This document shows positions 1-62,357 of a stretch of DNA of 64,000 nt, in pieces (positions within the stretch are counted from its first letter, which is position 1; the number at the start of each line of letters is the position of its first letter). Location of the stretch: contig NW_026262581.1 of the NCBI RefSeq assembly GCF_021869535.1, positions 11,222,001-11,286,000 of the forward strand, written 5' to 3'. The DNA is from Mytilus californianus. Taxonomy: Eukaryota. The notes beneath the pieces were generated by a model. That model searched no databases and was not told where the DNA came from. It saw only the letters and a program-made list of their open reading frames with translations. The position numbers were made by a program, and so were the translations under genes.

Positions 1-10
1 AATAACGAAT

Positions 11-3330: not shown

Positions 3331-3562
3331 CCACAGTAACAAAATCATTGTCATCCAGTACATGTTTAATGGCGTCATCTTGATCTAAAATTGCCCCTCC
3401 TTTGGCTTTTCTCACTTCGAATACTTTTTCTATAGCATGACCCGAGGAACTCTTGGCTTTGTAGTATCTCCTTAATGTCTCCTCTCCCAGCCATTTTACA
3501 CTCTCGGCCCCTTTGCATGGTACAGCAAACCAATCTCCTCTCACTCGAGCAGATAGTTTCAT
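3331..3562 (-). CDS. HAL: Histidine ammonia-lyase, first coding exon (N-terminal Par3/HAL domain); the gene continues off the left edge
   Basis: MKLSARVRGDWFAVPCKGAESVKWLGEETLRRY...ILDQDDAIKHVLDDNDFVTV resembles the vertebrate HAL N-terminus (VHVRGEWLAVPC...WLGREAVRRY...LLDNEDRLEVALENNEFVEV). Phase-1 donor G|GTCAGT at 3331/3330. Confidence 0.88.
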
Positions 3563-6500: not shown

Positions 6501-6629
6501 TACTTAGGTGCAAGCATCTAGACCTCTTCATCTTTAAACCTAGGAGCTACTATTTTAACATGGATTTAAACAGAGGGGTCATGCGTATCGCAGTAGATAA
6601 CAATAAAAGAAATTACACGTCTAGACAAC

Positions 6630-8429: not shown

Positions 8430-9070
8430 ATAAACATTTTATTTTCATTAGTATCTACCGTCAAATCCACGGTTGACATGTCGTAACAACTTCCAAGAAA
8501 GGACCTAAGCCATATGTCATACACTAAATCAACTCTGAAGTGGAAATTCTAACCTGAGACTACTATATATAGTCTCAGTTCTAACGGACCAATCCCATAT
8601 TTGAAGATATGCAAATCATATAAGAACTATTGTTCAAACACTTCTGTGCTTCGAAAGGATTCCAAATATGAAGAAGAAAAAAAAAGTATAAACGGAAAAA
8701 CTGTTCAAGTATGAGTGCTCCTACATGGGAGCCATAATTTAACATGACATAAAAAAAACACACGATATATCCGTTCCACTCACCACTACAGTGCTGTCAC
8801 CGGAAGAAGCGTGTGGTGAACAAAACACAAAAGTCAACATGGATTTTAAAGGGGTAGCTAAAAATCTGTGGAATAACCCGTTTGTTTGGTAACTAGAGAT
8901 TTTTTCATATAGAACGAACGTTATTATAGGTAACCATTCCTTCCTGTAAATTTGGACGTCTTGCATATTGCATAATTTTATATGTATACGTTTCTCATGA
9001 CATAACTCAGGTCATGTGGGTTGTTGCACATCGACAGGCTGTCACATGCCTCAGAAGCTATAAATGTTTC
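8430..9070 (-). pseudogene. Decayed coding-like segment of unidentified family
   Basis: Protein-like stretches (MCNNPHDLSYVMRN; WLPIITFVLYEKISSYQTNGLFHRFLATPLKSML; YGSHVGALILEQ; MGLVR*NFHFRVDLVYDIWLRSFLGSCYDMSTVDL) joined by frameshifts and stops. Removing the 32 bp insertion around 8554-8585 restores one frame. Confidence 0.45.
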
Positions 9071-11088: not shown

Positions 11089-11094
11089 GAAATA

Positions 11095-13544: not shown

Positions 13545-13662
13545 GACTTTGGGTAAAAGTTGGGGTGTATTCCTAGTAGCTATTTTTGTTGCCAGAGAGA
13601 TGGCAAAGGCTGAAGCAGAACAAGCTATCGAGGCAGCAGCCCAGAAAGTCATTCCGTCTTAA
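13545..13662 (+). CDS. TOMM6: Probable mitochondrial import receptor subunit TOM6-like, last coding exon
   Basis: Acceptor TTTTAG at 13544. (R)TLGKSWGVFLVAIFVAREMAKAEAEQAIEAAAQKVIPS* aligns with human (R)NLILNLGLFAAGVWLARNL. Donor AAG|GTAAG 11 nt after the stop; next acceptor at 14482. Human TOMM6 lies close to MED20. Confidence 0.55.
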
Positions 13663-15289
13663 ATGTTTTAAAGGTAAGACACTCTCTCATTAAAAGTTTG
13701 AAAATCTTTATTTGGTAGGCAGAAAACATAAATACAAGTGACAGAAAATGATCAACTGTCTAAAAATTAATAAAAGGAAGTCAATCCATTGTATTGAATA
13801 CCATCACTATTACAATGTATTGCTCTCATCATACGAAACAAATTGAGCTATAGAAAAATGTTTGTCACCAAGGTACATGTAAATTTTATTTGAAAAGAAT
13901 AGACTGTCATGTGACAATGTTAACATATGACATTCCCTTTCATATCAGTTAAAGTTTGAGTTTATAGTATTTATATTTTTATTGATGTTACAATTTGTAT
14001 TTATATCAATTGTTACAATGAGTTTATGCATGTTATTGCATTGAAATATATTGGACATCCAGGAAAGGCACTTTGAAATCACTTTTATTGCTTGGTGTAT
14101 TGTCATTCTTGATATGTCATTTATGCATAAAAAAAATCCTAAATTGATTCAATGATAGCTGTATGTAGTTTTTAAAAGGTCCTTCCTATTGATATTGTTG
14201 ATGTCATTTGATCTGTACTTTAAGTCCCTAGCCCGTTGCCCGAGAGTAGTGAAAATGAGGAAACTATTTATTTAGGCTAACAGAAGAAAGATATTAAAAT
14301 TGACTTTTCGGTCTAGTTTGTAAAATTTATTTGGTACAGAATGATCATTTGACATACTTTACATTTTTTTTAACAGTTAAAGATTATAAAAGTATTTTCC
14401 ATTTTTGTGCTTCTTTTGCATATATGAACCTCCAGTACTGACCAATGAATATTTCATGATTTTGTTATCTTTGTTTTTGCAGAATGTGAATCATAGAGTA
14501 AAACCAGACCAATGACACCATAGAACTTAGCTACCTGTGATATGTAGAATGGAAAGAGTTGAAAGGATTATTAAAATATTAAAAGAATCATTATTTTTAT
14601 GACTGTTGCCTTATTTACAATGACAATTTTTATACACTTTCAGATTTATTACTGGGTTCTGAGAGATTGAGTTTTGTCTGCCCTGTTCAAATTTTTCTCA
14701 ATGCATCATGGGTCTATCAGAATTTTAAGATGTGTAAATTGTTGATTGCTTAAATAGGGAGTACCTTTGACTTACATGAAAATTAGTAAGATCTAAACAT
14801 AATCAGGTGTCTTATGATTGTCAATGTGACAACCTGACAACTATTCAGATAGACCAAAGGATAAAGATGTGAACAATTACTGGTCACTGTACTGCATTCA
14901 ACAATGAGCAAAACCCATCCCATAAAGTAAGGTTCATTATACAAGCATTCTGAGGGTATTGCATATGCAGTACAATGTCACTTATCAGCTGTAATGTTAA
15001 CATTGGAAGTGTTTACACTTATATAAGACAAGCATTAAGTTACTGATGTGTTTGGGAATTTCGATCTTATGTATATTTTTTTAAGATTCAGATATAGGCA
15101 GAAACCCTGAGGCACCAAGGTGTTTTCACCTTTGACTGATATTTTTAAAAGCAAAAAGTTTGAAATATTAATCAGAAGTTTACAAAAATAAGACAATATT
15201 CAGGATGCTGAAAAATTAAGTTTAAACATCATAATTTCAGCAAAAACACAAACAAAGGAGTGAAGAGAATCTTCTAAATTCCAAACACA

Positions 15290-16997
15290 ATGAATCCAGT
15301 TTTGTCAGACAACACTGTGTTTACAGGGTATTCATCATTTAATGTTCATACATCTGTTTTCATGAAATCTAAAAGTAAATCCAGGTGTTTCTGTCAACAC
15401 TGCTTACAGCAAAGGCAGAGTAAATCTATGTGTGTCCGACAACTCTGTCTCGAGGTAAGCAGAGTGAATTTATATGTGTCTGACAACACTGTCTACAGGG
15501 AAAGCAGAGTGAATTAAGGTGTGTCTGACAGCACTGTTTACAGGGAAAGCTAAGTCAATTTAGGTGTGTCCGACAACACTGTCTACAGAGTAAGCAGAGT
15601 GAATCTAGGTGTGTCTGACAACATTGTCTACAGAGTAGGCAGAGTGGATCCAGGTGTTCTGTCAACACTGTTTACAGGGTAGGCAGAGTAAATATATGTG
15701 TGTCCGACAACACTGTCTACAGTTAAGCAGAGTGAATCAATATGTGTCCGACAACACTGTCTACATGGAAAGCAAAGTGAATTTAGGTCTGTCCGACAAC
15801 ACTATCTACAGACAGGCCTAGAATTAAAGACTGCCTGACAATTTTTTTTATAGGTTAAACAGAGTGAATCATGATACATCTGACAATACTGTATACAGGG
15901 TAAGCTGAGTGAATATATAGGCGTGTCTGACAATACTGTCTACAGGCCTATGGTAAGCATAGGTAATTAAGGTGTGTATGGCAACACTGTCGTGTAAACA
16001 ATGAATCCAGGTTTATCTGACAACATTGTCTACAGGCCTAGGGTATACCTGGTAAGCAGAGTGAATTAAGGTGTGTTTGACAACACTCTCTACATAGCAA
16101 GCAGAGTGAATCTATGTGTGTCCGACAACACTGTCTACAGGGTACAGAGTGAATCAATGTTTATCTGACAACACGGTCTACAGGGTAAGCTGAGTGAATA
16201 TAGGTGTATCCAACAACTGTCTACAGGGTTGGGAGAGTGAATCCAGGTGGGTCGACAACAATGTCTACAAGATGAGCAGATTTAATCATGGTATGTCGGA
16301 CAACACTGTCTAAAGATAAAAGACGAGTGATACATGGTTTGTCCGACAATACTGTCTACAGGGTAAACACCGAATCAAGGTTTTTCTGACATCACAGTAT
16401 ACAGGGTAAGCTGAGTGAATATAGGTGTGTACGACCACACGATTTACAGGCCTAGGGTAATACTAGTGAATTTAAGTGTGTATGGCAACACTGTCTACAT
16501 GAAAAGCTGAGTGAATTAAAGACTACCTGACAATTTTTTTACAGGCTAAACAGAGTGAATCATGATACATCTGATAATGCTGTATACAGGGTAAGCTGAG
16601 TGAATATAAAGGCGTGTCTGACAATACTGTATACAGGCCTATGGTAAGCATAGGTAATTAAGGTGTGTATGGCAACACTGTCGTGTAAACAATGAATCCT
16701 GGTTTATCTGACAACATTGTCTACAGGCCTAGGGTATACCTGGTAAGCAGAGTGAATTAAGGTGTGTTTGACAACACTCTCTACATAGCAAGCAGAGTGA
16801 ATCTATGTGTGTCCGACAACACTGTCTACAGGGTACAGAGTGAATCAATGTTTATCTGACAACACGGTCTACAGGGTAAGCTGAGTGAATATAGGTGTAT
16901 CCAACAACTGTCTACAGGGTAGGGAGAGTGAATCTAGGTCGGTCCGACAACAATGTCTACAAGATGAACAGATTTAATCATGGTATGTCCGACAACA
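15290..16997. repeat. 45 bp satellite array, left part
   Basis: Degenerate tandem unit GTGTCCGACAACACTGTCTACAGGGTAAGCAGAGTGAATCTAGGT. Higher-order duplication with a 692 bp period (15821 vs 16513). Confidence 0.93.
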
Positions 16998-17592
16998 TGT
17001 AACGAAGTCAGTAAGTGGATAAATAATTTTTATTATGTAATTACAAAGTTAAGACTGTTTCTAAAGTTCAAATGTTAGATTGTTCACAAACTGTCTCTAA
17101 AGTTGAATTGTTCGAATGTTCATATCGTCACACGGACACGTGATCATATAGTGGTATAACTGTTCGGTCCAGACTGAGTAATTCGGATGGTTAGTGAATT
17201 AATTCCAGCCTACCCACAAGGGGGGAGACCTTGGCGGAATCTCCTGTCGGATTCTCTCTGTACGAATCTATCCTTCGAGTCCAAAGCTGGATCTTATATA
17301 GTTCAGAGGGGTCATCCATCGTTACACAATGGCCCATAGCTGTAGGCCAGTTACGTAGTAGTCTGGTTGTGGAGTAATACTAGTCTGTGGTTAATTGTCA
17401 AACTATGCAATTAACCCCTGACGGATACATGTTATTTCACAGTAGACATGGTCATTTATTGGCTGCAGGGTATATGTCTATAATATTCGTACAGATTGTT
17501 ATTAAGTGTCTAAAGGTTACATGTAATCGTTTCGGATTTGCTGTATTTAGTTACTTCCGGATGATTAACGTATGGAACACAATTGTGTTACA
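16998..17592 (-). repeat. 3' LTR
   Basis: TG...CA termini; I found only 3 substitutions relative to 20231-20825. Confidence 0.95.
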
Positions 17593-17610
17593 TAATGCCT
17601 TCCATCCAAA
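17593..17610 (-). other. Putative polypurine tract
   Basis: Minus strand reads GGATGGAAGGCATTA immediately before the 3' LTR. Confidence 0.5.
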
Positions 17611-17699
17611 ATAGAACGAAAGTTCAATAAAATACGGTATTTTTCTTCCTGTAGGTTATTCTAATAGTTTAATTATTGTAAGGTTTCCCTTAACCATCA

Positions 17700-18840
17700 C
17701 CACATATCTATAGTTCATAAAATGCGGCAAGTCCAACATCTGGACACATAGAGTTCATATGATTCATAAATTCAATATTTGGATATATATTGTGCATACT
17801 TTTTCCCGTCACCATTATAGCATATTGTTCATCAACTGCTGGAAAGGGCCCACTTTTGTACATGTGTCTGTCATCATCATCTCCATTACGAAGTAGTTGA
17901 CGCATCTAGCTGGTTAGTTCATCCTTCTTAAGAGGCTGTTAACATCGGCCTTCGGTTAAGTTTCGTCCTTGATCAATGGCGCAGAGGAAGACATCTCTCT
18001 GGAATCAGTAACATCTGTCCCAACCAATCACGTAGACACCATTTTGTACCCATTGTTCGTGGCATTAGAACAAAAACTCACACCTTTCTTTTTGGCCAAC
18101 CAAGATACATTCTGAACAAATTAACAGTACAAAAATATGGCTATTCCAATGAAGATCGCACCTAAACCCCACTGATAAACTTATCTCAATTTGGAAAAAC
18201 TTAAACTTGTTAACTTCCTCTTATTTCTTTTTTATTTATCAATCAGATTATTGATAGTTTGTTCACTCGCCTTTAGGTCGCTGGGTTATTCAAGCCTAGC
18301 AACATTTTGTAAAACAATTCCTATATATAAATCAATACGTTCTTTTTTTATATCGAATTATCTGTTTAAAACAAACAAAAAATAAAAGGGGGAAACTGTT
18401 GTATTCAACTTCTACAAGTTTGAGAATCCTACATTATAAAAAAAAATATGTGTATTTACACAAGACGTGAGAAAATCATTATAAATTTACAATCAAATAA
18501 GTTCAATTCGATCATTTTATATAACCCTACACCTACATGATACCTATAAAAATAAATACTAAAATTTTTATGTGTTACTTCGTTACCAATTGTAATACTT
18601 TTACTTCTTTAACCTTAGTGTCTCATTATTTAATCTTACGCTAAAAATACACCACAGATTTATTCTCATTACTCTTAAAAAAAATCATTCATGTAAGATT
18701 CCATTGATAAAATTTTAACTACGTCTAGCACAAACTAAGTTACTGACTCTATATTTCATATTTGACTACAACACCTTGTTGCGAAAAAAAAAATGTCTTT
18801 CTCCTTAATCTATTACATTTTTCCAAAATTAGTATATAGT
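17700..18840 (-). pseudogene. Decayed envelope-like ORF with a transmembrane segment
   Basis: Stop-interrupted frames read ...HVGVGLYKMIELNLFDCKFI...KLNTTVS...SKLR*VYQWGLGAIFIGIAIFLYC*FV, with Cys motifs, an N-x-T sequon and a hydrophobic anchor near the 3' LTR. Confidence 0.4.
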
Positions 18841-19899: not shown

Positions 19900-20124
19900 T
19901 TAAGAATATGTGTATTCATAATTCTTAAATTGACGAACAATTTCTAAAAATACTAATAAAAATTTCGTGCGAACCACAGCTCTTGAACAAACTTCTGATT
20001 TTAAGCCTTTTAAATATACGGCCTCACTCCCTTTAAAATTAAAAACTGTACTTAACATGTGTGCCATCCCTTGAAAAGCCATTTCTACTTTTTGCACTGA
20101 CATAGAAATATCTTGATCGTCCAT
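19900..20124 (-). pseudogene. First ORF after the PBS, probable gag N-terminal remnant
   Basis: MDDQDISMSVQKVEMAFQGMAHMLSTVFNFKGSEAVYLKGLKSEV starts about 70 bp after the PBS. The call is positional. Confidence 0.45.
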
Positions 20125-20196
20125 AAAGAAAAAAAATGAAAGTAACTTAGTTCTTACGTTTTATATTCCTTTGCGTTGTTTAAGCGTGATTCCAAG

Positions 20197-20219
20197 TCGA
20201 TCCTGCTGTCTCGGCACCA
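20197..20219 (-). other. Primer-binding site (tRNA-Phe/His-like)
   Basis: Minus strand TGGTGCCGAGACAGCAGGATCGA, 11 nt from the 5' LTR. Confidence 0.75.
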
Positions 20220-20230
20220 AATTTACGACT

Positions 20231-48200: not shown

Positions 48201-51200
48201 CTAGCACTATTTCATATTAAGCCGCCCTTTTACCTCCTTCATTTATAATATCCTCCAAGACATTGGCTGAAATTTCATCCGTTGTGTCCAAGTCACTCGG
48301 ACATCCTGATGTACACACCCATCTGCATATAGAACGTATTCCAAAAAGTACCACAATAGTAGAAAGTATTAGGCAAAATTTATTTTTATTCACATTACAA
48401 AGTAAAAATTATTCCTCAATGATCAAGGAATATAACTTTTTCTATCCCTTCTAATATAGTGCTGATGCAATAATTTTTCCTTTGGTCTTTCATTTGATAT
48501 TTTCATTTATGATTAAAACTTAACAGAATACTTCAAACACGATGTTATATAAAGAGTTACGAATTAAACTTATTTCTTAGGTAAAAGGGTATGAAAAAAT
48601 CGTTTATACTGGGTTTTTTTTTAAATTAACTAAAGATGAATGAAAATGTTATTTTACCAAATTACAAATTACAAGTAACGGGTGCCATATGCGGAGCAGG
48701 ATCTGCTTACCCTTCCGGAGCACCTGAGATCACCCCAAGTTTTTGGTGGGGTTGGTGTTGTTCAGTCTTTAGTTTTCTATGTTGCGTTTTGTCTACTGTT
48801 GTTTGTCTGTTGGTCTTTTTCTGTTTTAGCCATGGTGTTGTCAGTTTATTTTTGACTTTAATATGAGTTTGAATGTCACTTTGGTATCTTTCGCCTCTCT
48901 TTTACACAAGCTTGAAAAGAAACTTAAATTGATGATCAAATGAAAACCCTTTCATTTTTAATCCGAATTGTTGCATAATTCATAAGAGAACTATTGATAG
49001 ATTCCAATAAGTGTCTTGGAAGTTGAAGTTTAAGTGTTTAACCAAAGCTTTTGCGATCCAATATAGGTGAATCGTTTTCTCTTATACAAGGGAAGTGGGT
49101 TGATCCGTTTCACAATGGGATAATCACAATACTTGCGCAGATGTTTAAATGTAGAGTTATTATGACACAATTGGTTTTTTTTCTGGTTGAATCAGAATCT
49201 TTTATATGAGAGTAGTATATATCATTGATAGAGCACTCTTGGTTACTATTAGATGTACTGACATAAGAAACGAACAATACCTAAACGGACCAAATCCCAA
49301 AGAAAATATATCTCCCATAATGTCCTGTACATATGATGGATAGCGGAACAAGGTTCCAGTGGCACTTTCATCTCTTCCTACGTCAGCTCCTGAAAATATA
49401 GTGATAGACATAATGTAGAGTTATGCAAAAATTTCACCCTACTTGGTTGAGCTCTGCAGAATTTCAGTGTCATAGATGATCAAGAATATGTTCCGTTTGT
49501 CATAGCCCCAGTCCTTTGATTATTTGCTTCGTTTGTGATATGGCACAGAAAGGAGCAACAATTCGATGGAAGCCCATTATTGGAGCTAGAAATGCTTTCC
49601 CTTACGGAGTACCTGAGTTCACCTCTGGTTTTTCATGGCATTCGTTGGCTACAATTTATGTTTCCTGCGTATAGTATGTCTTGTTTATCTTTTATGATTT
49701 TTTTTCGACTTATTCTTTTGATTGCCACTAACAGTTTTCTTACTTTTTCGGTGTAAACCATCGACTTGCGATAAAAAGCTGAGAACAAACAACTGATAGA
49801 TTTAGTGTAAATTGCTCTTTCTGGCATAATACGATCGACATTAAAACGAAAGCAAAATGACCTGTACATGAATTTGGATATTTACAAAATTTTCTAGACC
49901 ACCCGGTCACTTAGGTTCTCAATATGAAAAACACACTAAATTATTATATTTTCTTTTTTGAATTTATTTTCATTACTATTATAGTAGTCCTAAAAAATGT
50001 CAGTATTTACCCGCTCTTGAAGCTTCCAAAAGAAACGCATTTCCATAGTCCCAAAAATACAGTCCAAGGTTAGACAGCTTATTGATTGCTGTGACCTGTC
50101 TTCTGAGGCTAAAACAAAGACAAAATGGCAACTATGATTCCAGTTTATTGTCAAAGTTTTAAAATGCTTAAGTACGCCTGTATAGAAACAAATTATTTGA
50201 TATTTTTATCCAAAATATACGTATGATATCAATGTCATTGTGTAATTCAACTTATTACTATATTTGGCCTAATAATGTTTTTGTTTGGAGCGTCACTGAT
50301 GAGTCTTTTGTAAACGAAACCCGCGTGTTGCGTACAAAATTATAAACATGTTATCCTCGATGAGTTTTGTCTTCGGACAATAAATTTTAAGTTTAACAAT
50401 AAATACATATGTTATAACTATATCGTTAATGTATTCCTCGTTCTCATTTGTAAGATCTTATATACTTTTCTTTAACAAAGATTTCATTTGGATTATGTTT
50501 CGCTAACTGGAGTTTGGGTTTCTTCTATAAGAATGGTAAACGGAGATAGCAATTTTGGGCATATTTTTGTTTGTACGATAGTTTCTGTGTTTGTTTTAAA
50601 CTTGCCTTTCCTGTACTAGATTCTTGAACCTTATTGGATCTTCATGCATCATAATCCTCGACTCATCATACGTTAGCTGAAATATGGGATTTGAGCGTCA
50701 AATTCGTGGTCCACATGGTGTACCGTTACAATGAGTAAAAAATGGGTATAGGTCAAGTATATTTTTATATTTCTTTACAGGTAAGAAACGTTGTGCAGAT
50801 AAGTATAATTTGTTTTAATTAAACTTTGATTTGAAATTTTAGAGATGAGAAGATTTGAGTATAATACCTTTTCCAAATTGACAAAAAGTGCAACTCAAAA
50901 CTACAATTTGAGACCCATACGATGATCTCAGTTCTTCTATCGTGAGTAGAAACATACCAACTGCCCAGCCTATGACGTAAATTTGTCCAAGTTTGTGCTA
51001 TCAACAAGAGAATGTATTCATGATACATATAGTGAATTTACCAATAAAGTGGTGAACTTTTAACAAGAAAAGCTACTTCAACAGGGAAGACCGACTTAAT
51101 ATAATCGAATAGGTTGGTTTGTGAAGTTTAAATGTATAAATACTGTAATAGACCTTACAAGTTATCTATCATCTGTTTTATATTATTAGTATTTTTACTT

Positions 51201-54200
51201 GCTTTGTTGTATTACTTTCCGTTACACTTTTTACTAGATATGACCCTAGAATCGCATAATGACGCACACTTAAAAGGAAATGCTTTTATGCAAATACTTT
51301 GTCACCAGAGCTGATATCACTTCGGTTTGAGACATTGCGATGTCGATCATTTCGATCCAATTTTGTTGGTTTTTGTGTGAATTTTAACTTCATATTTATA
51401 CCCCCGCTGCAAAGAAGGAAATGGCGTATACTGGTTTACGTCTGTCCGTGTTTCTGTCCATCCTTCCGACCGTGTTTCCGTCCTATAAAATTTCTTCGCC
51501 TATTTCTCAGGAACTACAAATAAGAACTTCCTAACAATTGGTACCAAGGTTCATGTAAGCATACTATACAATGTGATGCATTTTCACATTTATCACTCAT
51601 TACGTTCCTGTTAATCGAACACTTTCATATTCTTATTTCTACAATTTGAGACCCATACGATGATCTCAGTTCTTCTATCGTGAGTAGAGACATACCAACT
51701 GCCCAGCCTATGACGTAAATTTGTCCAAGTTTGTGTAACAATATGAAAAATGTACATTTTGTTTAAATGTACATTAAATTTTGTCATATTCTTACAAATA
51801 TATATGAAATTTTCGTCGCAACTTTCCCAGGGTCTACCGGTCTGGAATCAAACTTTATGTGAGCATGCTCAACCGAGTGATGCATTTTTTCAACCATCGC
51901 TTATCAACTTCCTGTTCACCGAATACTTATAGCGGGGTATTATCAGTGAGCAATTGCCCACAGATCAACATTTGTAAAATACCTGCACAGGATAATATCC
52001 TCCAAGATATGGATTGTGACATGAGGTTTGATCTGAACCTAGTTCTACTAATAGATCGCCTGTATTCTCATATTCTTCTACGAATCTTTCCCTATCAGTA
52101 TAAAAAAATAACTATAGTAATAACTTTTCTTGGTTAAAAGACACTTAAATTATTTTTTTGAATAATTGATAAATTTTTTGTTGTCGAAAACGTGCTGAGA
52201 ATGTGGTCCAGATATTCTAGAATATATATACTATATTTGCTATTATCAATTTTCCTAGCCGTATATACCATTCACTTTTTGCGTATATTTTTTAGAAGAA
52301 AATAAACTGAATGCAGACAAAACATACTAGTAATTAAAAAAGAATTGGTTATTAATCATCATGTTAACATACTAACCATAAATCTACAATATTTCCATGA
52401 TACCCAATGCTGATAGCTTCTTTCTGACGTCTTGCGTGTCGTATTTTACCAATACATTCGTCCAAGTTGTTTGCGATGGTTGCAACCCATCCTTGGTTGT
52501 GGCGTTTCTCTAAAGCCTCTTTACTTACCTAAGTGATAAAAAGCCACATTTAAAATTCACTATCTTCTCCTTTTGTTACTTTGATTATTATTCTGACAAT
52601 CTTGATATTTTACAGATGCTTGATAACAGTGGTAGTGTCATTTTCCCAAAATGATAATACTAACTTGTTGCTTACACACGTTTAATGTATTTGGGTGTGG
52701 AAACGCTTTCTGGAGTTTTAATATCATTTTAAGGTGATCATTTTTTTTTCGTATTTGTGTAAATTTTCTGCTTCAATTACAATTGACAATGAACACAAGA
52801 ACACAAGAACAACAACAAAGCAGTTGAATAAGAGCAGCTCATTTTTACAGCTTTACTGCTTTGATAACGACTCAAAATGAAGCATAACAGAAAACCGCTT
52901 ATCTTAAAAACTATCATCGACTAAACACTGTGGAATATATAGTTACAACGTTTGGTTTACTTTTTGTATTTTCTAGTTGAAGTATTGGTTTCTTTACGAG
53001 GCATACACTGTATGCATATCCACGAAAGCATTTAAATACGCTATAATTGTTAAATCAGTATAGTATTTCATTAAAGAGAAAATAAATAGTGTGAAAGTGT
53101 GACAACTTCAAACAAAAAAATAATAATAGTCAAAACAAAAAAAAAAGAACATGAAAGCAAAATAAAAATAAAATGCTCCGCAGGGCGCAGCTTGATACGA
53201 CCGCAGAGGTCGAACCCTGAACAGTCGGGGCAAGTATGGACACAACATTCAAGCTTGATACAGCTCTGAATTTGGATTGTGATTGAATATTTGACACAGC
53301 ATAGGTTACTGACACAGAATGAATGTGGTCTAAGAACTTAAAAATTTTAAATTGGACATTCACCTATTATGGTCCAATATCCAAAATCTAAATACATGGT
53401 TAGATTCAGCATATCAAAGAACCCCAATAATTCAATTTTTGATGAAATCAAACAAAGTTTAATTTTGGACCGTTTTGACCTCAATGTGGACAAAGTTCAT
53501 AACGGGGCCCAAAAATCAAAAATCTAAATACATGGTTAGATTCAGCATATCAAAGAACCCCAATAATTCAATTTTTGTTGAAATCAAACAAAGTTTAATT
53601 TTGGACCCCGATTTGGACCAACTTGAAAACTGGGCCCATAATCAAAAATCTAAATACATGTTTAGATTCAGGATATCAAAGAACCCTAAGAATTCAATTT
53701 TTGTTAAAATCAAACTAAGTTTGATTTTGGACCCTTTGGACCTTAATGTAGACCAATTTGAAAACGGAACCAAAAATTAAGAATCTAAATACACGGTTAG
53801 ATTCGGCATATCAAAGAACCCCAATAATTCAATTTTTGATGAAATCAAACAAAGTTTAATTTTGGACCCTTTGGACCTCAATGTGGACCAATTTAAAAAC
53901 GGGGCCCAAAATCCAAAAACTTAATACACGGTTAGATTCAGCATATTAAAGAACCCCAAGAATTCAAGAATAAAACCCCATTGAAATAGGTCAAGAAATA
54001 AGCATTTTATACGAAGTATCTTCTTTTGCACAATACTGTGCAATTGAATATTTCTTACTATTGAGCAATACTGTACAATTGACATTTTTTTGCTATTGCG
54101 CAATATTGTGCTATTGGATATTTCTTGCTATTGCGCAATACTGTGCAATTGAAGATTTCTTGCTATTGCGCAATACTGTGCAATGGAAGATTTCTTGCTA

Positions 54201-57200
54201 TTGTGCAATACTGTGCAATTGAAAATTTCTTGCTATTGTACAATACTTATTATATAATAATTTACACATCCTGTTTGGTGTGTATCTCCTACCATATCAT
54301 TATTATTTGCTTTTAAATATAAATCAGAAATAACCAACTTAAAATGGAAAATTTTAAAAGAAAAAAAAAAAGGAAAAAAAGAAAAAAAGGAAAACAAAAA
54401 ATCCCCCCCCCCCCAAATTTTTTAAAACCCCTTATGATTCATCACCCCCAAACTCAATCCCAGCCTTCCCTTTGTGGTATGGTACCTTGCAGTACAATTT
54501 CAGAGAGATCCATACACTTGAACACAAGTTATTGTCTGGAAACTAGAAAAATGCTTGTTTTAAGGCCCCTTTTTGGCCCCAAAATCCTAAACGTTTAGGG
54601 CAATTACCCCCAAACTCAAACCCAGCTTTCCTCTTGTGATATGGAACCTTGTAGTACAATTTCATAAAGATCAATACACTAACACACAAGTTATTGTCCT
54701 GAAACTAGAAAAATGCTTGTTTTTTCCCCTTTTTGGTCCCTAATTCCTAAAATTTTGAGGCAATTACCCCCAAAATCAATCCCAGCCTTCCCTTTGTGGT
54801 ATGGTACTTTGCAGTACAATTTCAGAGAGATCCATACACTTGAACACAAGTAATTGTCTGGAAACTAGAAAAATGCTATTTTTGCCCCCAAACTCAATTC
54901 CAGCTTTCCCTTTGTGATATGGAACCTTGTAGTTCAATTTCAGAAAGATCCATACACTTACACACAAGTTATTATCATGAAACTAGAAAAATGCTTGTTT
55001 TTTGCCCCTTTTTTGGCCCCTAATTCCTAAAATTTTGAGGCAATTACCCCCAAAATCAATCCCAACCTTCCTTTTGTGGTATTGAACCTTATGGTAAAAT
55101 TTCACGGAGATCCATTCACTTAAACTAAAGTTAGAGTGCGAAAACCAATGTGTCTTCGGACGACGACGACGACGCCAACGTCATACCAATATACGACCAA
55201 AAATTTTTAAATTTTTGCGGTCGTATAACTAGGGACATGACCCCTCCAGCATTTTTTTATTTGTTCATTTTCAGTTACGAGAGACTATAAAAAATGTTTT
55301 GTTTGATATTGAACAGGTGTACCTCAGCTGTTACACTTATACATCCACATATTGTTGCTGCCTTTGGTTGTGCCCCACTCATTCCACCCAATCCAGATGT
55401 AACGAACACCTAAAATCGAATTTATATTTATATATACATTTTATCTTCTCGGGAACTGGCTGTTAGAATAACAGTGTATACTCATACATTTTATACTCTT
55501 TTAATTATCAAAACAATATAAGGTTATCATTACATTATACCGGTTTTCTGCAACTAGATTTTTGTGTTTTTTGCTGTTTTATATTTGAAACTTCTAGATT
55601 TTCGAATATTTGGTTTCGATCACCACTGAAGACAAATATTTTCGAAATGCGCATATTGTTTAATAATTGAACTTTGGTATCTTCTAATTTTATATTTTCA
55701 TAAATGTCGATAAACATAAAATATGCAAATATTAATAATGATAATAATGTTTTGATCAGCCGTCAAGCATCTCACAAAAATGATTGTGTGAAAATAACAA
55801 ATTATAAAAAGAAAAGAAAGTATATTCGGAAGGTCTATTTTGATGAAGGCAAACTAATGTTACGCTTAAAATATAGCAAAAATTGTCTTTGTAAATTTGT
55901 AAATAAACAAATGCTGGTTTACCTTTCCCCTCATATCCGTGGTACCCAGATGTCGCCTAGCTGCATTCAGTACTGTCAACTAAAATATTAAAGTGAGATG
56001 TGACATCAAGAAATAAGATTTGTTTGAATGTAGTATTTATATATTGAACATTAAAAAGTCGTCAATGAAGATCATTAAAGTTTTTTTTATGTATATTAAT
56101 AATATATTCTTTATCCGTTTGACAATAGAGAGTCTGGACTTTCATTTCTGTATCGTTCACCATAAAGCGGCGTTGTCAATCAGTAAATCCATGTTCGGAG
56201 GAAAACTTAGAATCACAACTTCAGTATAATTTAGCTTACCGTTGTGCCATGAACTATCCCTTGTGGTCCTATATAGCAGAAACTACCAGCTGTCATCTGA
56301 CCATACCTGATTAAAAATGAAACAGTTAAAACTACTCTATCAGTTTTCGTACAATCTACCAATGACCAACCATTACTCGCGTTATTTAGAATTTCATTTG
56401 TAGCCTATGTTCAGGTAGAGATGTAATCATTCCAATATCATGCACCCAAAAACAGTATTTAGAATTAACTCAGTTTAAAAAAGAAAACTTACATTGTGTT
56501 TCCGAGTGCAAACATTTTCTCGTACATTTCTCTTGATGAGTAGTTTGGTATGACCTATAATATAAAAAAAAATTTAATGAGTTTGTTCTCGGTAATAGGA
56601 CAAAGTATTGATACTTTTTTTTAAACCAAAACGATTTGTTATTCATAAAATACATTAAAAAAAAAGATTGTTACTTTATTCTTTAATAGGTGTTTCATAA
56701 TTCACATTTTGTCCTAGTATTGACTGCTGGAAGACAATCCACAATTCATCATAAACTTTGTTTAAAAAAGCTGAAATTTTGTTCATTAGAGAGAACAGTA
56801 TCAAATGATACCAATAATATTTGAGTATTGTATTTTTGTCATAGGCCCGTCGTCGTCTGTTTTGTTTGGTTTTTTTTGGAATTTGGAGGTTGCAACTACA
56901 TAATTTGTTTGTTTCCAGAATCTCAGAGTATGCAGGGTAAAAGAAGGATCATATTAAAAAAGTATAATAAAAATACCAGTCTCAAAGGCAACTACAAAAG
57001 GGGAAGTCCATGAAAACTGACAAAATCAAACTTTATCAATCAACGGAACAAGTGAAAAACAACTGCTATATTCCGGATATGGTCAGGCATTTTTCGAAGA
57101 AAATGGTGGGTAAAATCTGTTTTATAGCTAGTTTACATGTTGTTGTTGTTTTGGCCGCATATAAAACCGTGAAAAAACTTTTATTTGTTTTTTCCTGGGG

Positions 57201-60200
57201 TTTTATCGTTTGATTTGAAAAATATCGAACTCCAAGGTAAATTAAAAAAAAGGAAAGTCCAAATGCTCGACTTTTCAACCAACGGAACGAATGAAAAACA
57301 ACTGTCATAGGTATTTTCCTGGAAAAAAATGGTTGGTTAATCCGGGTTTTATAGCTAGGTAAACCTCCCATTTGTATCATAAACAGGTAAAGACATTCAA
57401 TTTGGTTATCTCAAGTGTTGGACTATTATACTGCTTGGAAATGGTCCAACATAAAACAACAATGAAGAATACTTTCAGTGTTGCTGGTTATACAAATTTT
57501 TCAGTGCTACTTTGATATAGTCCATACTATGACCAGTGTGTACAAGGTTTAAATAAACATACCATTAGGTTGTTGATGATAAGACTTGGTGCTTATGAAA
57601 GACAAGGACACAGTGTACTGAATAAGCAGAAAAGAAACTGAATAATGTGTACCTACCATACCGTTAGTTATAACGAGCCTTGGTGCTGCCGGGCTACTTG
57701 GGAATAGTCCCATTGGATGACCGGAGTACATCACTAACGTTTGTTCTTCAGACATTTCTGAGAGGTAGGAGAGGGTGATCCAAAACTGAATCAAACATAT
57801 CGTCATTATGAGATGTGTACAATTAAAAGAAATTTCAAAAGAACAGGAAGGCTTTACAAAATAGGTCAAAAACATACTATTTGGCGTACAAAATTTTAAT
57901 TCTGGTATGAGTTTATTCACAAATAAGACTTTATTACAATATTTTAATCTTATGCTTATAACGTGAAGATAAATCTTAATGTATGATTTTTTCTTCAATT
58001 CTAAGTGAGTTACTTTTTCATGTAGTTTCTGTTAGTCTTGCATTTTCACTATCACGAACAAATGCAGACTCTCAACCTGTAATAGCTGAAAATCGTTTTC
58101 TCTCTGATTTCACTAATATTTTTTTTTTGGTGTTCGTATTGTTTGAACGTTTCCTTTGTTACTTGCACATATGTATTTATCTATTGTACCCTTCTAGTAT
58201 TTAGTGGAAATTTTTGACTGCTGTTCCATGTACATGCATGTCCTTTTCCTATTTATGAACACAGAAAATGATAATATTTTCCTCAGTCTAGTGCTTATTA
58301 AGTACTGGTTATTGTTCTCCAAGTGAGAGTTCTCCAAGTTCTCTTACTTCTACGTTCTCTGCATGTATAGCAAATTGCACACACCAATCGTGATGTAACT
58401 GATTTGACCATTAATGAATGACTATCTTCGTACGCGTATAAAAAATGTGTTAAAAATCATAATACTATTTTTTCAAGTAATACCTGGGCCCAGTTCGAGA
58501 AAACCTGCCCGTTTCCTCCATATGTAACCAATTCTTGTGGAAATTGGGCCACATGAGGGTCTAAGTTATTAAGTATCATATGGATGATTGCTGCTGCTTG
58601 TCTGTTTCTCCCAGGTATCTCGTCAATTGGATATGCTCTGCAATAAACAACCCTTATAAGTTGAAATGGCGTGGTGACAATTGAAACTATAATTTGATTT
58701 ACAACTTCTTTCTAATTTGAGTGTTGATTATATTATATAGTGTTTGCTAAATCGCATATTTGGCTTTCATTGCACCTAAATTCAAACAGCCAAACCGTCA
58801 TAATTATCGTCCATGTCTATACTTACTATTTTGCAGTCTGTAATACTAATATCAAAGGGGACTCAAAAGAGGAAGCATGAAAACAAAAATATTTTGAATT
58901 TGTTTATGAAAAGAAATATAGAAACAATCAAAACTTGGTGCCAGTCATCTTCGCTAGCCAAGGGTTACGATCCACTTCCCTCCTCTCCACGTGGAGAGGA
59001 GGGAAGTGGATCGTAACCCTTGGCTAGCGAAGATAGGTCCCAGTAGGATAATACAAAAATACAAAAGCAGGAACATATAAAATTTGACTTAATCGTTTAA
59101 CATCCAGTGGAATTATACATACTAGTAAAGGACGATCACTTGATGAAAACACCATTCGGTAAATTTGATTTAAATCGTTACAGGCATCACTGAAGATGCA
59201 TAAATTACCGAAATGCGATTCTAATTGGTACCGTAAATTTTATGTTATGAGAAGTTGACATTAGCATTCTAATTTTGCCTGTAATGCTAAATTAATTTAA
59301 GAGTTACTAAATGAATTGTAAAACAATTCACATACTGGACACTTATTGAGATTTGTTGTTAAAGAAATCTTTCATTTTCGGAGAACGTGCAATCCCCACA
59401 TTTCTCAAACGCAGAGATTCGAACCAGAAATGTTCTGAAGGAACTCGTAAGGTTAAATAATCGCTAGTACTGATGTTTGAAAACAATGTTTTCATTAATT
59501 TGCTTGACAGACGGAGCAGCAAGAAGTTTTATGTTTTGTTACAGCCTGTCAATTTCTCATAACATAAAACAAATATAGGTAAAAATATACTATTACATAG
59601 ATGCAAACAAAATAAAAACACTAAAGATAGTCGTTTCTGGTCATTCTTTCTTTTGTGCATCTAATGTATGAAATACCACTACAACAGATAACAACACTAA
59701 AGTTATAGTTAATTAAGTAATCAGCCCAATGCACAATAAAATTACTTGTTTAAACCAGGTTTAAGCGTATTTACATGTATAAAACGGATACCCATTAAGG
59801 TATTTATTGATGTTCTTTAAACTCATATGTCAAGTATATGAAAAAAACCTCATCAAAGATACCAGGCTTGTAATGTAAAACATAATACGCGCGTTTCGTC
59901 TAGAAGAAAATCAGAAGTTGGCCTGGCGCTGAAATCCAAACAGTTGGAAGGCCAAATCAACTACAAAAATGAAGATAATTTGAAAATAAAGTTTCAAAAT
60001 GTTGTGCTAAATCTGGCTAAGGCCATATATGTTTTGGGGAAGGACAACCTTAGCGTTTTTGAATGTTATTAACTCTTCGATCACAATAAATTCACAGTAA
60101 ATGACCGTATTAAAGCTCTATCATGTCAATACAGAAGCACCCACAACTGGACTGACTAAACCCTCGGGGTCGAAACGTCCATCAACAGCGACATCGTCCC

Positions 60201-62357
60201 AGTGGTTGTAAAAATTTAATAAAAAATACCGGGCTTATAATATAACACGTAATACGCATGTTTTGTCTACATAAGACTCAGCAGTGGACCTGGTGCTGGA
60301 ATTCAAACAGTTGGAAGGCCAATTACGAAGTTATAGAGCAATAAAAACCAAAAATTCCAAGTGTTGTGCCAATTCAGACTTAGGCCATATATGTATAAGG
60401 GTAGGAAAACCTTAGTGTTCTAAATTATATTTACGGTTAAGTAACAGTTAATTTACAGATAATGACCGAATTATTGGTATTTCATGCACAGCAAATGAAC
60501 ATTGATTACAACTACCATACTATCAGAAAATCATCGGAAATGACCGTATCAAGGATATTCCTTGTCAGTATAAGAGCACCCCCAACTGGGCAGGTGATAA
60601 TCATACCTTCATGAGTTGGATCATATATATTATACTGATGTTGATTGGGGTAGCATTATATAAATTTGCAAGCTTCAGTTGTGCCGATTTCTTTGACTTT
60701 GACATATTAAGATTAGTGAAAACTACCGCAAATGGATAGGGATTTCCAATTAGAGGAAGGAAATGTTTCCATAAGTCTTGAAAGGGTATGAATCAATAAC
60801 GGCAACAAGACAATACAAGTCGGTGTGTACGCGTTTGGTAACGAGTCTGCTGCATTTTGTGAAAATTGTTTAAAAGATTATGAAGAAAAGTTTTTTAATT
60901 TTATTTTTTTTCATATTTTTTTTTTACCGAGGCAACTAACTGCCTCGGTTGCCTAAACGTAAGCTACGCCAATGTTAAATCGAGGTAGAAACGTCCATCA
61001 ACAGTGACATCGACCCAGTGGTTGTAAAACTCATCAAAGATACCAGTCTTATAATGTAATACGCAGTGCATGAGGTTTAACTTCCCAAAAAATGCCTTTA
61101 CCAGGTCAGGAATATGACAAGTTTTTTTTCTGTTCGTTCCGTTGGGTTATAAAGTCTAACGTTTGATTTTGTCAGTTTTATAGACTTTTCCCCTTTTCGA
61201 ATTTACGTTGGAGTTCGGTATTTTTGTTATAGTTTTTCGTCTAAAAAGACTCAGCAGTTGGCCTGGCACTGGAATACACGCAGTAAGTAGTCCAAATTAA
61301 TTGCATATAAGCTATAAAACCAGGTTCAATCTACATAAGAAAATGCCTGTACTAAGTCAGGAATATGACAGTTGTTATCCATTCGTTTGATGTGTTTGAG
61401 CTTTTGATTTTGCCATTTGATTAGGGACTTTCCTTTTTGAATTTTCCTCGGAGTTCAGTATTTTTGTGATTTTACTTTTTGAAGAGCGTTGAAAACGCAA
61501 AATTCCTATTTGTTGTGCCAAATCAGGCTAGTGCCATATATATATATTGGGATAGGAAAACCTTTGTGTTTTGAATGATATTAACGCTTTAGTAACAAGA
61601 AATTTATAAAAAATTACTGTATCAATCATATGTCATGTCAGTACAGGTCATATGACCATATAGCTTCAAAAAACAATATCGAGGCTAGTGAAGAAAGCGA
61701 AATAATTTCCTAGTTTTGGTTATGGTATATTTTACCTCATATCAAACGAAGGTAAAAGCCTGTACATGTATATATGGCCGTAATTACGTAATTCATCGGC
61801 AAACTCATGGGCTAAAATTTCATGCTGGTCTGGTGGAAAGTATCGTAGTGCATTCTGTAGTGCTAGCTAGAAAGTAAATGTAAATTTGGTCATTAATTAA
61901 ATCACATTGTTTTATCTACCGTTTAGTTTGAAGTATTATCACAAAATCTTAGATACTTAATGGTATTCAGACAGCTGCACAATGTCATTGGGTACTATCA
62001 TATAACCAGTCACTATTGTCAGGGAATATGAAATATACCTAATGTCAGTAATTATTTATGATTTATGAGGTTTCCCTGTGAAAGATTGTGCAGTACATAG
62101 ACAAGAGGGTACCGGAATCTTATGTCCACAACTGTTCTTGAACCTTTGACTGGAGGTAAACAAAACTAACAGGATCGAGACAAATTGAACAGAAAACTTA
62201 TATTGATCTCAATAATTAAAGTGTGCGAACTTACCCTCTGTTCGGCCGGTGTTAGATCAGGTGTCCTGATCGGTGCATGTGGGACTGTATCATCCCTCTG
62301 ACGCCTCGGTGGGAGAGGGTCTGGGATACCGTCACATATCTCTTTCAGCGAAGACAT
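42267..62357 (-). CDS. UROC1: Urocanate hydratase, complete, 20 exons, 676 aa
   Basis: Exons 62235-62357, 61736-61866, 58484-58637, 57657-57785, 56493-56554, 56240-56306, 55923-55979, 55323-55409, 52377-52528, 51983-52091, 50606-50676, 50011-50108, 49281-49389, 48234-48322, 47419-47588, 46915-47014, 45237-45318, 44056-44104, 43343-43393, 42267-42407 total 2031 nt with all phases consistent. Motifs: FPQELVTYGGNGQVFSNWAQ, YGQMTAGSFCYIGPQGIVHGT, VFVTSGLGGMSGAQ, LGSDQTSCHNP, FWDYGNAFLLE, SRDHHDVSGTDSPFRETSNIYDGS, GATWVALHNGGG. Confidence 0.98.
44165..44885 (-). mobile_element. 5'-truncated Penelope-like element (RT C-terminus plus 3' tail) in UROC1 intron 17
   Basis: Minus frames read IYPIELEIKDTTDT...KLYDKRDDFSFPIVNFPFLCSNIPAAP...LIRYSRAC, followed by the GGAGCAGGATCTGCTTACCCTTCC tail. 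Confidence 0.8.
45618..46340. mobile_element. Kolobok-type MITE, 723 bp
   Basis: TTAA TSD (45614-45617 and 46341-46344). Perfect TIR GGTAGCACAATACAAAGATTT with a purine-purine terminus. It splits a Penelope-tail repeat. Confidence 0.85.
48680..48902 (+). mobile_element. Tail-only copy of the Penelope-associated short repeat
   Basis: GGAGCAGGATCTGCTTACCCTTCCGGAGCACCTGAG...GGTATCTTTCGCCTCTCTTTT, the inverse of 44165-44400. Confidence 0.75.
50901..51735 (+). repeat. 97 bp direct repeat (50901-50997 and 51639-51735)
   Basis: CTACAATTTGAGACCCATACGATGATCTCAG...GTCCAAGTTTGTG occurs twice with one substitution. Confidence 0.9.
53171..55228 (+). mobile_element. Composite HINE-like element in UROC1 intron 8, inverted near-copy of 38811-41050
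   Basis: Same termini and the same three internal arrays in reverse order and orientation. Confidence 0.85.
58947..59034. repeat. Perfect 88 bp palindrome with no spacer, in UROC1 intron 2
   Basis: ATCTTCGCTAGCCAAGGGTTACGATCCACTTCCCTCCTCTCCAC|GTGGAGAGGAGGGAAGTGGATCGTAACCCTTGGCTAGCGAAGAT. Confidence 0.97.
59840..61640 (+). repeat. Degenerate tandem copies of an interspersed repeat of about 350 bp, in UROC1 intron 2
   Basis: ACTCATCAAAGATACCAG...CGTTT(C/T)GTCT...GGCCATATAT...AACCTTAG recurs near 59850, 60210 and 61030. Related fragments lie at 47800-47930 and 50260-50370. Confidence 0.65.

What the first reader, a model, noticed from the sequence alone, without database searches (positions are those of the whole stretch)
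3331..62357. Gene order HAL-TOMM6-SNRPF-MED20-UROC1 looks like a pre-duplication ancestral neighbourhood
Seen: the five genes lie within 60 kb. Established from recalled human gene order: SNRPF and HAL are neighbours at 12q23 near USP44; TOMM6 and MED20 flank USP49 at 6p21.1; UROC1 lies near CHST13/TXNRD3 at 3q21, whose paralogues CHST11/TXNRD1 are at 12q23. Inference: the two human pairs are interleaved here, as expected if one bilaterian block was split by reciprocal gene loss after the vertebrate genome duplications. This independently supports the weak TOMM6 call.
Basis: partly seen in the sequence, partly recalled or inferred. Interest (0 to 1): 0.72.

Follow-up and report, generated by a model that had tools for sequence, protein, structure and literature searches.

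The report
Ancient conserved gene block in mussel
This mussel DNA carries five ordinary genes in a very old neighbourhood: four keep the same order in oysters and a ribbon worm, two in a sea star and a lamp shell, while mammals have them on three separate chromosome regions.

Summary
All five genes are there. The window is intron-rich DNA of a Mytilus-like mussel.

- **HAL:** only exon 1 (3331-3562, minus) lies in the window. Its best relatives are all HAL proteins.
- **TOMM6:** confirmed, but only after I rebuilt it as a two-exon, 55-residue gene (8839-8888 + 13545-13662). The spliced protein matches Drosophila Tom6 in PDB entry 9etm (E 2e-4).
- **SNRPF, MED20, UROC1:** complete. SNRPF and MED20 start 320 bp apart on opposite strands.

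Conservation elsewhere:

- The order and orientation UROC1> <MED20 SNRPF> <TOMM6 recur in two oyster assemblies and in the nemertean Lineus.
- MED20-SNRPF-TOMM6 also occur together in a clam and a snail.
- The MED20-SNRPF pair is head-to-head in a brachiopod and a sea star.
- MED20 was not found within 10 kb of SNRPF in a coral.
- HAL joins the block only in Mytilus.

So the block is ancient. Its split by reciprocal loss after the vertebrate genome duplications is a well-fitting inference that I did not test: no amphioxus, lamprey or gar data were reachable. This is a good new example of a known phenomenon.

The parts
3331..3562 (-). HAL (histidine ammonia-lyase) exon 1: start codon at 3560-3562 and the N-terminal Par3/HAL domain. 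The rest of the gene lies to the left of the window.
   Evidence: Pfam Par3_HAL_N_term 5.6e-9. 99% identical to M. edulis HAL CAG2202395.1, which continues into Lyase_aromatic. No lyase exon in 1-3316.
1655..2978 (.). 78-bp minisatellite, 17 copies, inside HAL intron 1.
   Evidence: TRF, 97% matches; seen as repeated 25-residue ORFs.
8839..8888 (+). TOMM6 coding exon 1: ATG in a good Kozak context, 16 codons plus TG, then donor gtaact.
   Evidence: Found by matching the oyster exon-1 peptide. DNA read. Conserved and open in M. edulis.
13545..13676 (+). TOMM6 exon 2. Its first G completes a Trp codon. It encodes the transmembrane helix, has the stop at 13660-13662 and the donor gtaaga at 13677.
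   Evidence: Acceptor and donor read. About 80% nucleotide identity in two mytilid-like contigs whose flanks do not align. The spliced 55-residue product matches Drosophila Tom6, 9etm_G, at E 2.3e-4.
15374..26061 (.). Arrays of a 45-bp satellite (15374-16440 and 21165-26061) with a duplicated block between them. They fill most of the TOMM6-SNRPF interval and look much shorter in M. edulis, where the window parts flanking them (14661 and 26247) align about 1 kb apart.
   Evidence: TRF; M. edulis comparison.
28697..34989 (-). SNRPF (Sm protein F), 87 residues. Exons: 34984-34989, 32165-32290, 31589-31653, 28697-28763.
   Evidence: LSM domain. Exon peptides. Named SmF homologues. Exon 1 found by analogy with oysters.
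34990..35308 (.). 320-bp spacer between the SNRPF and MED20 start codons on opposite strands. Presumed bidirectional promoter.
   Evidence: Start codons located. The same head-to-head pair is 86-350 bp apart in Lingula, Lineus, Patiria and oysters, and about 2 kb apart in Ruditapes.
35309..41770 (+). MED20, 213 residues. Exons: 35309-35322, 36274-36416, 37699-37970, 41558-41770.
   Evidence: Pfam Med20 profile 8-71, 61-150 and 148-208. Splice sites read. The CDS sums to 642 nt.
42267..62357 (-). UROC1 (urocanase), complete, at least 19 coding exons. The first is 62357 down to about 62235 and the last about 42407-42267. Its 3' end lies about 500 bp from the MED20 stop codon (tail to tail).
   Evidence: Urocanase_N, Urocanase and Urocanase_C Pfam hits. 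Exon peptides. Last exon found by tblastn with the Lineus and oyster C-termini.
63427..64000 (+). First 509 nt of a 28S (LSU) rRNA, about 1 kb upstream of UROC1, with no 5.8S in front. Not part of the block.
   Evidence: Rfam RF02543, 303 bits.

Best explanation
The window holds a piece of a very old animal gene neighbourhood. Its core is MED20 and SNRPF, transcribed away from each other from a shared spacer of a few hundred bases. TOMM6 converges on the 3' end of SNRPF, and UROC1 converges on the 3' end of MED20.

This four-gene arrangement existed at least in the common ancestor of molluscs and nemerteans. The MED20-SNRPF pair existed at least in the common ancestor of protostomes and deuterostomes. 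In mussels HAL sits head-to-head with TOMM6.

In mammals the same single-copy genes lie on three regions that carry paralogous neighbours: TOMM6-USP49-MED20; USP44-NTN4-SNRPF-CCDC38-AMDHD1-HAL; and UROC1 near CHST13 and TXNRD3. The simplest account is that the block was duplicated with the rest of the genome in early vertebrates, and that each gene then survived on only one copy.

Shown here: the five gene identities, the conservation across phyla and the mammalian neighbourhoods. Inferred: the timing and manner of the vertebrate split, and that HAL belonged to the ancestral block.
For: Gene identities.

Same order and strands for UROC1, MED20, SNRPF and TOMM6 in two oyster assemblies:
- L011: UROC1 1-6127 +, MED20 7576-9666 -, SNRPF 10001-16689 +, TOMM6 19532-21118 -.
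- L012 has the same layout.

Same arrangement in Lineus longissimus, L013: UROC1 1-7662 +, MED20 8498-9859 -, SNRPF 10001-11168 +, TOMM6 15733-16159 -.

MED20, SNRPF and TOMM6 together in Ruditapes (L005) and Batillaria (L004).

MED20 and SNRPF head-to-head in Lingula, 86 bp apart, and in Patiria, 179 bp apart.

The TOMM6 intron splits a Trp codon (TG|G) in mussel, oysters, Batillaria and Lineus, so these are orthologues.

Mammalian neighbourhoods: PMC13332154, PMC8396740, PMC10464233. USP44 is the closest paralogue of USP49: PMC9879932.

From my own knowledge, not tested here: FRS2/FRS3, PRICKLE1/PRICKLE4, CCND2/CCND3, ALDH1L2/ALDH1L1, CHST11/CHST13 and TXNRD1/TXNRD3 link human chromosome 12 with 6p21.1 and 3q21.
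Against: - HAL is next to the block only in Mytilus (the window and M. edulis L003). It is absent from the flanks fetched in oysters, Lineus, Lingula and Batillaria.
- UROC1 is not next to MED20 in Lingula, where an acyltransferase gene takes that place, nor within 6.5 kb in Batillaria.
- TOMM6 was not found beside SNRPF in Lingula or Patiria.
- MED20 was not found within 10 kb of SNRPF in the coral Porites or in an unidentified ENA eukaryotic contig.
- No USP44/49 or AMDHD1 gene lies in the window.
- No amphioxus, tunicate, lamprey or gar locus was examined, so the state just before the duplications is unknown.
- Each locus was limited to 10 kb on either side of the anchor gene.
Confidence: 0.72

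Rival explanations
1. The block is ancient, but vertebrates broke it by ordinary rearrangement (inversion, translocation or single-gene transposition) before or after the duplications, not by reciprocal loss between duplicated copies.
For: The block has been broken without any genome duplication in other lineages. Lingula and Batillaria lack UROC1 next to MED20. TOMM6 was not found beside SNRPF in Lingula or Patiria. No chordate outgroup was examined here.
Against: Each mammalian fragment is flanked by a member of a paralogous pair: USP49 with TOMM6 and MED20, and USP44 with SNRPF. By recall, the same holds for CHST13/TXNRD3/ALDH1L1 with UROC1 against CHST11/TXNRD1/ALDH1L2 on chromosome 12. 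That is the expected signature of duplicated segments, and random rearrangement would not put the pieces on paralogous segments.
Confidence: 0.15
2. HAL is not an ancestral member of the block. Its place next to TOMM6 is a mytilid-specific juxtaposition, and its nearness to SNRPF in mammals is coincidence within one large linkage group.
For: HAL is next to TOMM6 only in the window and in M. edulis. The gene upstream of TOMM6 is a TLD-domain gene or Bud13 in the two oysters and a glutamate-receptor gene in Lineus. Tachypleus HAL has no neighbour within 10 kb.
Against: HAL lies about 25 kb from SNRPF in the mussel and two genes from SNRPF in dog. Two independent close linkages of the same pair are unlikely if gene order within a chromosome is scrambled.
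Confidence: 0.3
3. The five genes are together in this mussel by chance or through a local assembly artefact.
For: An orphan 28S fragment at the right end of the window shows that the region contains odd insertions. There are also large satellite arrays.
Against: Independent assemblies of other species and phyla show the same order and orientation.
Confidence: 0.02

Closest known systems
Conserved metazoan microsynteny blocks and head-to-head pairs that share a promoter
   Same: Unrelated genes keep order and orientation across phyla. The core pair, MED20 and SNRPF, is divergent with start codons 86-350 bp apart in six of the seven species measured (about 2 kb in Ruditapes).
   Different: I found no paper that mentions this block. 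It mixes housekeeping genes (SNRPF, MED20, TOMM6) with a tissue-restricted catabolic enzyme gene (UROC1). CpG depletion differs accordingly: observed/expected is about 0.25 over MED20 and 0.7-0.9 over UROC1.
Vertebrate paralogons with differential loss of duplicated genes after the two early genome duplications
   Same: Single-copy genes of one invertebrate block lie on mammalian regions that carry paralogous neighbours (USP44 and USP49).
   Different: The pre-duplication chordate state was not examined, so only the invertebrate side and the mammalian end state are documented here.
Tom6/TOMM6, small subunit of the mitochondrial outer-membrane translocase (Drosophila 9etm chain G; human 7ck6 chain E)
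   Same: A protein of 52-57 residues with one transmembrane helix. The mussel protein matches the fly chain over residues 6-40 at E 2.3e-4, including the N-N-x-F-x-W and K-S-x-G-x-F stretches.
   Different: The mussel protein is not recognised by Pfam TOM6p, and the snail orthologue scores below the curated cut-off (19.6 against 27 bits). It lacks the long N-terminal extension of the human protein. No gene is called at this place in the M. edulis, Lineus or Batillaria records and in one of the two oyster assemblies (L011), and it appears mis-modelled as a 132-residue product in the other (L012).
Bacterial hut operon (hutH, hutU, hutI)
   Same: HAL and UROC1 catalyse consecutive steps of histidine breakdown and lie 39 kb apart in the mussel. 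In mammals HAL is adjacent to AMDHD1, which catalyses the third step.
   Different: Three unrelated genes lie between them. They are on the same strand but are separate, intron-rich units, and there is no evidence of co-regulation.

Membership tests
TOM6/TOMM6 | Significant sequence similarity to a Tom6 subunit seen in a solved TOM complex | tested here: met
   The mussel 55-residue product matches 9etm_G at E 2.3e-4. The Batillaria orthologue matches it at E 5.3e-5 and human 7ck6_E at E 0.098. 9etm is the Drosophila TOM complex (PMC11707698).
TOM6/TOMM6 | Pfam TOM6p (PF15184) at or above the gathering score of 27 bits | tested here: not met
   Mussel: no hit at E up to 10. Batillaria: 19.6 bits, E 7.8e-4, below the cut-off.
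TOM6/TOMM6 | Small protein of about 40-75 residues with a single transmembrane helix towards the C-terminus | tested here: met
   55 residues, with a hydrophobic stretch at about residues 22-33 (gene model).
TOM6/TOMM6 | Physical subunit of the TOM complex in mitochondria | not testable with these tools
   Needs proteomics or co-purification.
SNRPF (Sm protein F) | LSM/Sm domain, with closest relatives named SmF rather than another Sm or LSm protein | tested here: met
   PF01423 at 1.4e-11. Hits named small nuclear ribonucleoprotein F are 85-100% identical over exon 2.
MED20 | Pfam Med20 domain covered end to end | tested here: met
   Profile positions 8-208 of 208 over three exons, best E 6.6e-21.
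UROC1 (urocanase) | Urocanase_N, the Rossmann-like domain with its glycine-rich NAD motif, and Urocanase_C | tested here: met
   PF17391, PF01175 and PF17392. The G-L-G-G-M-S-G-A-Q stretch lies in exon 55278-55409.
HAL (histidine ammonia-lyase) | Lyase_aromatic domain with the Ala-Ser-Gly triad that forms the MIO cofactor | not testable with these tools
   That part of the gene lies outside the window. The 99% identical M. edulis protein does carry Lyase_aromatic.
HAL (histidine ammonia-lyase) | N-terminal Par3/HAL domain whose closest relatives are HAL rather than PARD3 or TONSL | tested here: met
   Eight of the ten longer representative hits scanned are HAL; the other two, 231 and 275 aa, show only the N-terminal domain. 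The PARD3 and TONSL domains in PDB score only E 0.01-0.05.
Ancient conserved microsynteny block | Same genes in the same order and orientation in at least two phyla | tested here: met
   Four genes in Mollusca and Nemertea; two genes also in Brachiopoda and Echinodermata.
Paralogon split by reciprocal loss after the vertebrate duplications | The vertebrate fragments lie on segments that derive from one pre-duplication chromosome | tested here: inconclusive
   The only tool-based evidence is the USP44/USP49 paralogy and the mammalian gene lists. The other paralogue pairs are recalled. No linkage-group table could be read.
Paralogon split by reciprocal loss after the vertebrate duplications | The block is intact in an invertebrate chordate or another close outgroup | not tested
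The sea star shows only MED20-SNRPF.

The most novel reading that the evidence does not exclude
HAL and UROC1, together with AMDHD1 (adjacent to HAL in mammals), are the remains of an ancestral animal cluster of histidine-breakdown genes wrapped around the MED20-SNRPF-TOMM6 core. Three of the four steps from histidine to glutamate would then have been encoded within a few genes of each other before the vertebrate duplications. Such linkage could reflect shared regulation or, more speculatively, descent from an operon-like arrangement.
Probability: 0.15. Interest if true: 0.65.

Novelty: new member of a known kind. Interest (0 to 1): 0.42.

Why it matters
- It adds a clean, small and easily scored example of deep microsynteny. 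The four-gene block has identical orientation in molluscs and a nemertean, and its two-gene core reaches deuterostomes.
- Its mammalian orthologues lie on three regions with paralogous neighbours, so it can serve as a marker for reconstructing pre-duplication vertebrate chromosomes.
- Tom6 is present in molluscs and a nemertean, but no gene is called at that place in most of the records examined. It can be found by position and by a Trp codon split by the intron.
- The nearness of two, perhaps three, histidine-catabolism genes is worth checking in more phyla.

Tried and rejected
**TOMM6 exon 2 searched alone**
- No Pfam hit.
- No PDB hit by phmmer or with profiles A1, A3 and A4.
- The word search found only two mytilid-like exon ORFs.

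At that point the TOMM6 call looked unsupported.

**Rejected TOMM6 gene models**
- A stand-alone 42-codon ORF starting at the ATG at 13534. One oyster has no in-frame ATG there, and the AG|G acceptor is conserved.
- A first-exon guess at 5134-5165. The phase fitted and the block is conserved against M. edulis. I dropped it once oyster footprinting showed the real exon at 8839-8888.

**Other TOMM6 checks**
- Exact look-up of the two oyster Tom6 products: not in the collection.
- By eye, the mussel protein also resembles other one-helix mitochondrial microproteins. I recalled the 6.8-kDa proteolipid. No tool supported that, so I gave it no weight.

**Other genes and structures**
- USP44/49 and AMDHD1: no long ORF or conserved coding block for either in the window.
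- PDB search with HAL exon 1: only weak TONSL and PARD3 domain hits, which do not discriminate.

**Synteny checks that gave nothing**
- Tachypleus HAL flanks, an unidentified ENA contig, and Porites.
- A 'KDPFVW' match downstream of Patiria SNRPF has no start codon and was judged chance.

**Literature**
- No paper on this block.
- No gene-level linkage-group tables held.

**Human material**
- One hit (P0164) is the human SNRPF protein. I did not look it up, and no contig I took for human was fetched, saved or compared.
Full report
**What the window is.** It is 64 kb of AT-rich (34% G+C), intron-rich animal DNA with no N. CpG depletion is patchy and no ORF exceeds 160 codons. The first exon of HAL is 99% identical in protein to 'HAL [Mytilus edulis]'. 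The DNA, however, is only 78-87% identical to that M. edulis assembly where it aligns. The source is therefore a mussel related to, but distinct from, that assembly.

**HAL.** Only exon 1 is in the window (3331-3562, minus strand).
- It encodes the Par3/HAL N-terminal domain.
- Downstream on that strand there is a 78-bp minisatellite and no lyase exon.
- The domain also occurs in PARD3 and TONSL, and PDB hits to those are weak. I therefore spent the single exhaustive protein search on this exon.
- Of 167 representative hits, eight of the ten longer ones scanned have this domain followed by Lyase_aromatic; two shorter ones (231 and 275 aa) show only the N-terminal domain. The named ones among them are all histidine ammonia-lyases. 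The identification holds.

**SNRPF, MED20 and UROC1.**
- SNRPF (minus strand) has four coding exons and gives 87 residues. Exon 2 is 85% identical to mammalian SmF and 97-100% identical to other invertebrate SmF.
- MED20 (plus strand) has four coding exons and gives 213 residues, covering the Pfam model end to end.
- The two start codons are at 34989 (minus) and 35309 (plus), 320 bp apart.
- UROC1 (minus strand) runs from 62357 to 42267 in at least 19 exons, with all three Pfam domains. Its last exon ends about 500 bp from the MED20 stop codon.

**TOMM6, negative phase.** This was the weak point of the finding, and the first results went against it.
- The only conserved coding block between HAL and SNRPF is an exon at 13545-13676 (plus strand).
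- It has a clean acceptor and donor. It is 80% identical in two mytilid-like metagenome contigs whose flanks do not align, and 95% identical in protein in M. edulis.
- Alone it gave nothing in Pfam or PDB.

**TOMM6, resolution.**
- The oyster loci fetched through SNRPF carry a related exon in the same relative position.
- Comparing two oyster assemblies revealed a second small conserved exon upstream. Its mussel counterpart is at 8839-8888.
- The junction splits a Trp codon (TG|G). The same junction is seen in oysters, the snail Batillaria and the nemertean Lineus.
- The spliced mussel product has 55 residues. It matches chain G of PDB 9etm, 'Mitochondrial import receptor subunit TOM6', at E 2.3e-4. 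That entry is the Drosophila TOM complex.
- The Batillaria orthologue matches the same chain at E 5.3e-5, human TOM6 at E 0.098, and Pfam TOM6p at E 7.8e-4, below the curated cut-off. It is tied to the bivalve exon by profile comparison at 96.7% probability.
- I therefore accept the gene as Tom6/TOMM6. Pfam membership at the curated threshold is not met.
- No gene is called at this place in the M. edulis, Lineus or Batillaria records or in oyster L011, and in oyster L012 a 132-residue product is called instead, which I take for a mis-model.

**Gene map of the window.**
- HAL (minus strand, leaving the window to the left).
- TOMM6 (plus strand), head-to-head with HAL.
- 45-bp satellite arrays.
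- SNRPF (minus strand), tail-to-tail with TOMM6.
- MED20 (plus strand), head-to-head with SNRPF.
- UROC1 (minus strand), tail-to-tail with MED20.
- A 28S fragment.

**Conservation in other species.** Each locus covers 10 kb on either side of an SmF or HAL gene.

| Species (locus) | Genes found with SNRPF |
|---|---|
| Two oyster assemblies (L011, L012) | UROC1, MED20, TOMM6, same order and strands |
| Lineus longissimus, nemertean (L013) | UROC1, MED20, TOMM6, same order and strands |
| Ruditapes, clam (L005) | MED20, TOMM6 |
| Batillaria, snail (L004) | MED20, TOMM6 |
| Lingula, brachiopod (L009) | MED20 head-to-head only; other neighbours differ |
| Patiria, sea star (L008) | MED20 head-to-head only; other neighbours differ |
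| Porites, coral (L010) | none within 10 kb |
| Unidentified ENA eukaryote (L007) | none within 10 kb |

- HAL is beside TOMM6 only in the window and in M. edulis.
- Tachypleus HAL has no neighbour within 10 kb.
- The four-gene block therefore predates the split of molluscs and nemerteans. The MED20-SNRPF pair predates the split of protostomes and deuterostomes.

**The vertebrate side.** I could not and did not fetch human sequence. Published gene lists give these neighbourhoods:
- Dog chr15: METAP2, USP44, NTN4, SNRPF, CCDC38, AMDHD1, HAL, LTA4H (PMC13332154).
- Cattle chr23: TFEB, PGC, 'FRS6' (apparently FRS3), USP49, MED20, TOMM6, BYSL, CCND3 (PMC8396740).
- Cattle chr22: ALDH1L1, CHST13, TXNRD3, UROC1, ZXDC (PMC10464233).

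USP44 is described as the closest paralogue of USP49 (PMC9879932). Further paralogue pairs linking these regions rest on my own recall: FRS2/3, PRICKLE1/4, CCND2/3, ALDH1L2/1, CHST11/13 and TXNRD1/3.

**Interpretation.**
- An ancient block is documented in four invertebrate phyla. Its single-copy members lie in mammals on regions with paralogous flanks. Duplication followed by survival of each gene on one copy is the most economical account.
- It also explains why USP49 sits between TOMM6 and MED20, where SNRPF would be, and why USP44 lies beside SNRPF.
- Untested: the state in invertebrate chordates and early-branching vertebrates, the linkage-group assignment, and whether HAL was in the ancestral block or joined it in mussels.
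- Rearrangement without reciprocal loss remains possible. I give it about 0.15.

**Verdict.** The ancestral-neighbourhood reading is supported for four genes and plausible for the fifth. The duplication-and-loss step is a well-fitting inference. This is a good new instance of a known kind of phenomenon. It has two side benefits: Tom6 can now be annotated in spiralian genomes, and there is a hint that histidine-catabolism genes were once linked.

Noticed in passing
window 63427-64000 (+): The first 509 nt of a eukaryotic 28S rRNA begin about 1 kb upstream of the UROC1 start codon. No 5.8S rRNA was detectable in the 1.9 kb before it. This is an orphan or truncated rDNA copy, or an assembly join.
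   Followed up: partly
window 15374-16440 and 21165-26061; duplicated blocks about 17194-17611 and 20427-20937: Large arrays of a 45-bp satellite fill the TOMM6-SNRPF interval, with a duplicated unique segment between them. In the M. edulis locus the aligned window parts on either side of the arrays (14661 and 26247) lie only about 1 kb apart, so the arrays look much shorter there and the expansion recent.
   Followed up: partly
window 39025-40848 (MED20 intron) and 53374-55008 (UROC1 intron): The same composite repeat occurs in both introns in opposite orientation. It has internal tandem units of about 160, 135 and 35 bp. It is probably a transposable element with internal satellites.
   Followed up: no
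window 9775-10044 (+), inside TOMM6 intron 1; also 6597-6860 (+): An ORF with a PHD-finger match (E 1.4e-5) lies in the intron. A nearby ORF looks by eye like a decayed reverse-transcriptase fragment but has no Pfam hit. These are likely transposon remnants.
   Followed up: partly
L013 15733-16159 (-), L004 12902-13611 (-), L011 19532-21118 (-), L012 15714-16064 (-), L005 26080-26199 (-), L003 3062-3184 (-): Tom6 orthologues of Lineus, Batillaria, two oysters, Ruditapes and M. edulis. No gene is called at these places in L013, L004, L011, L005 and L003. In L012 a 132-residue product is called instead, which I take for a mis-model. All six lie in the same position relative to SNRPF; the TG|G split Trp codon was read in Lineus, Batillaria and the two oysters.
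   Followed up: yes
window 1-64000, CpG profile: CpG observed/expected is about 0.25 over the TOMM6 intron, MED20 and the 3' end of UROC1 (12-16 kb and 36-44 kb). It is 0.7-0.9 over most of UROC1 and the HAL promoter. This fits gene-body methylation of housekeeping genes and not of the tissue-restricted catabolic genes.
   Followed up: no
L009 (Lingula) 1-21505: In Lingula the MED20-SNRPF pair is flanked by an acyltransferase gene on one side and by MANF (ARMET) and an HSP70-family gene on the other. None of these is in the mussel window.
   Followed up: no
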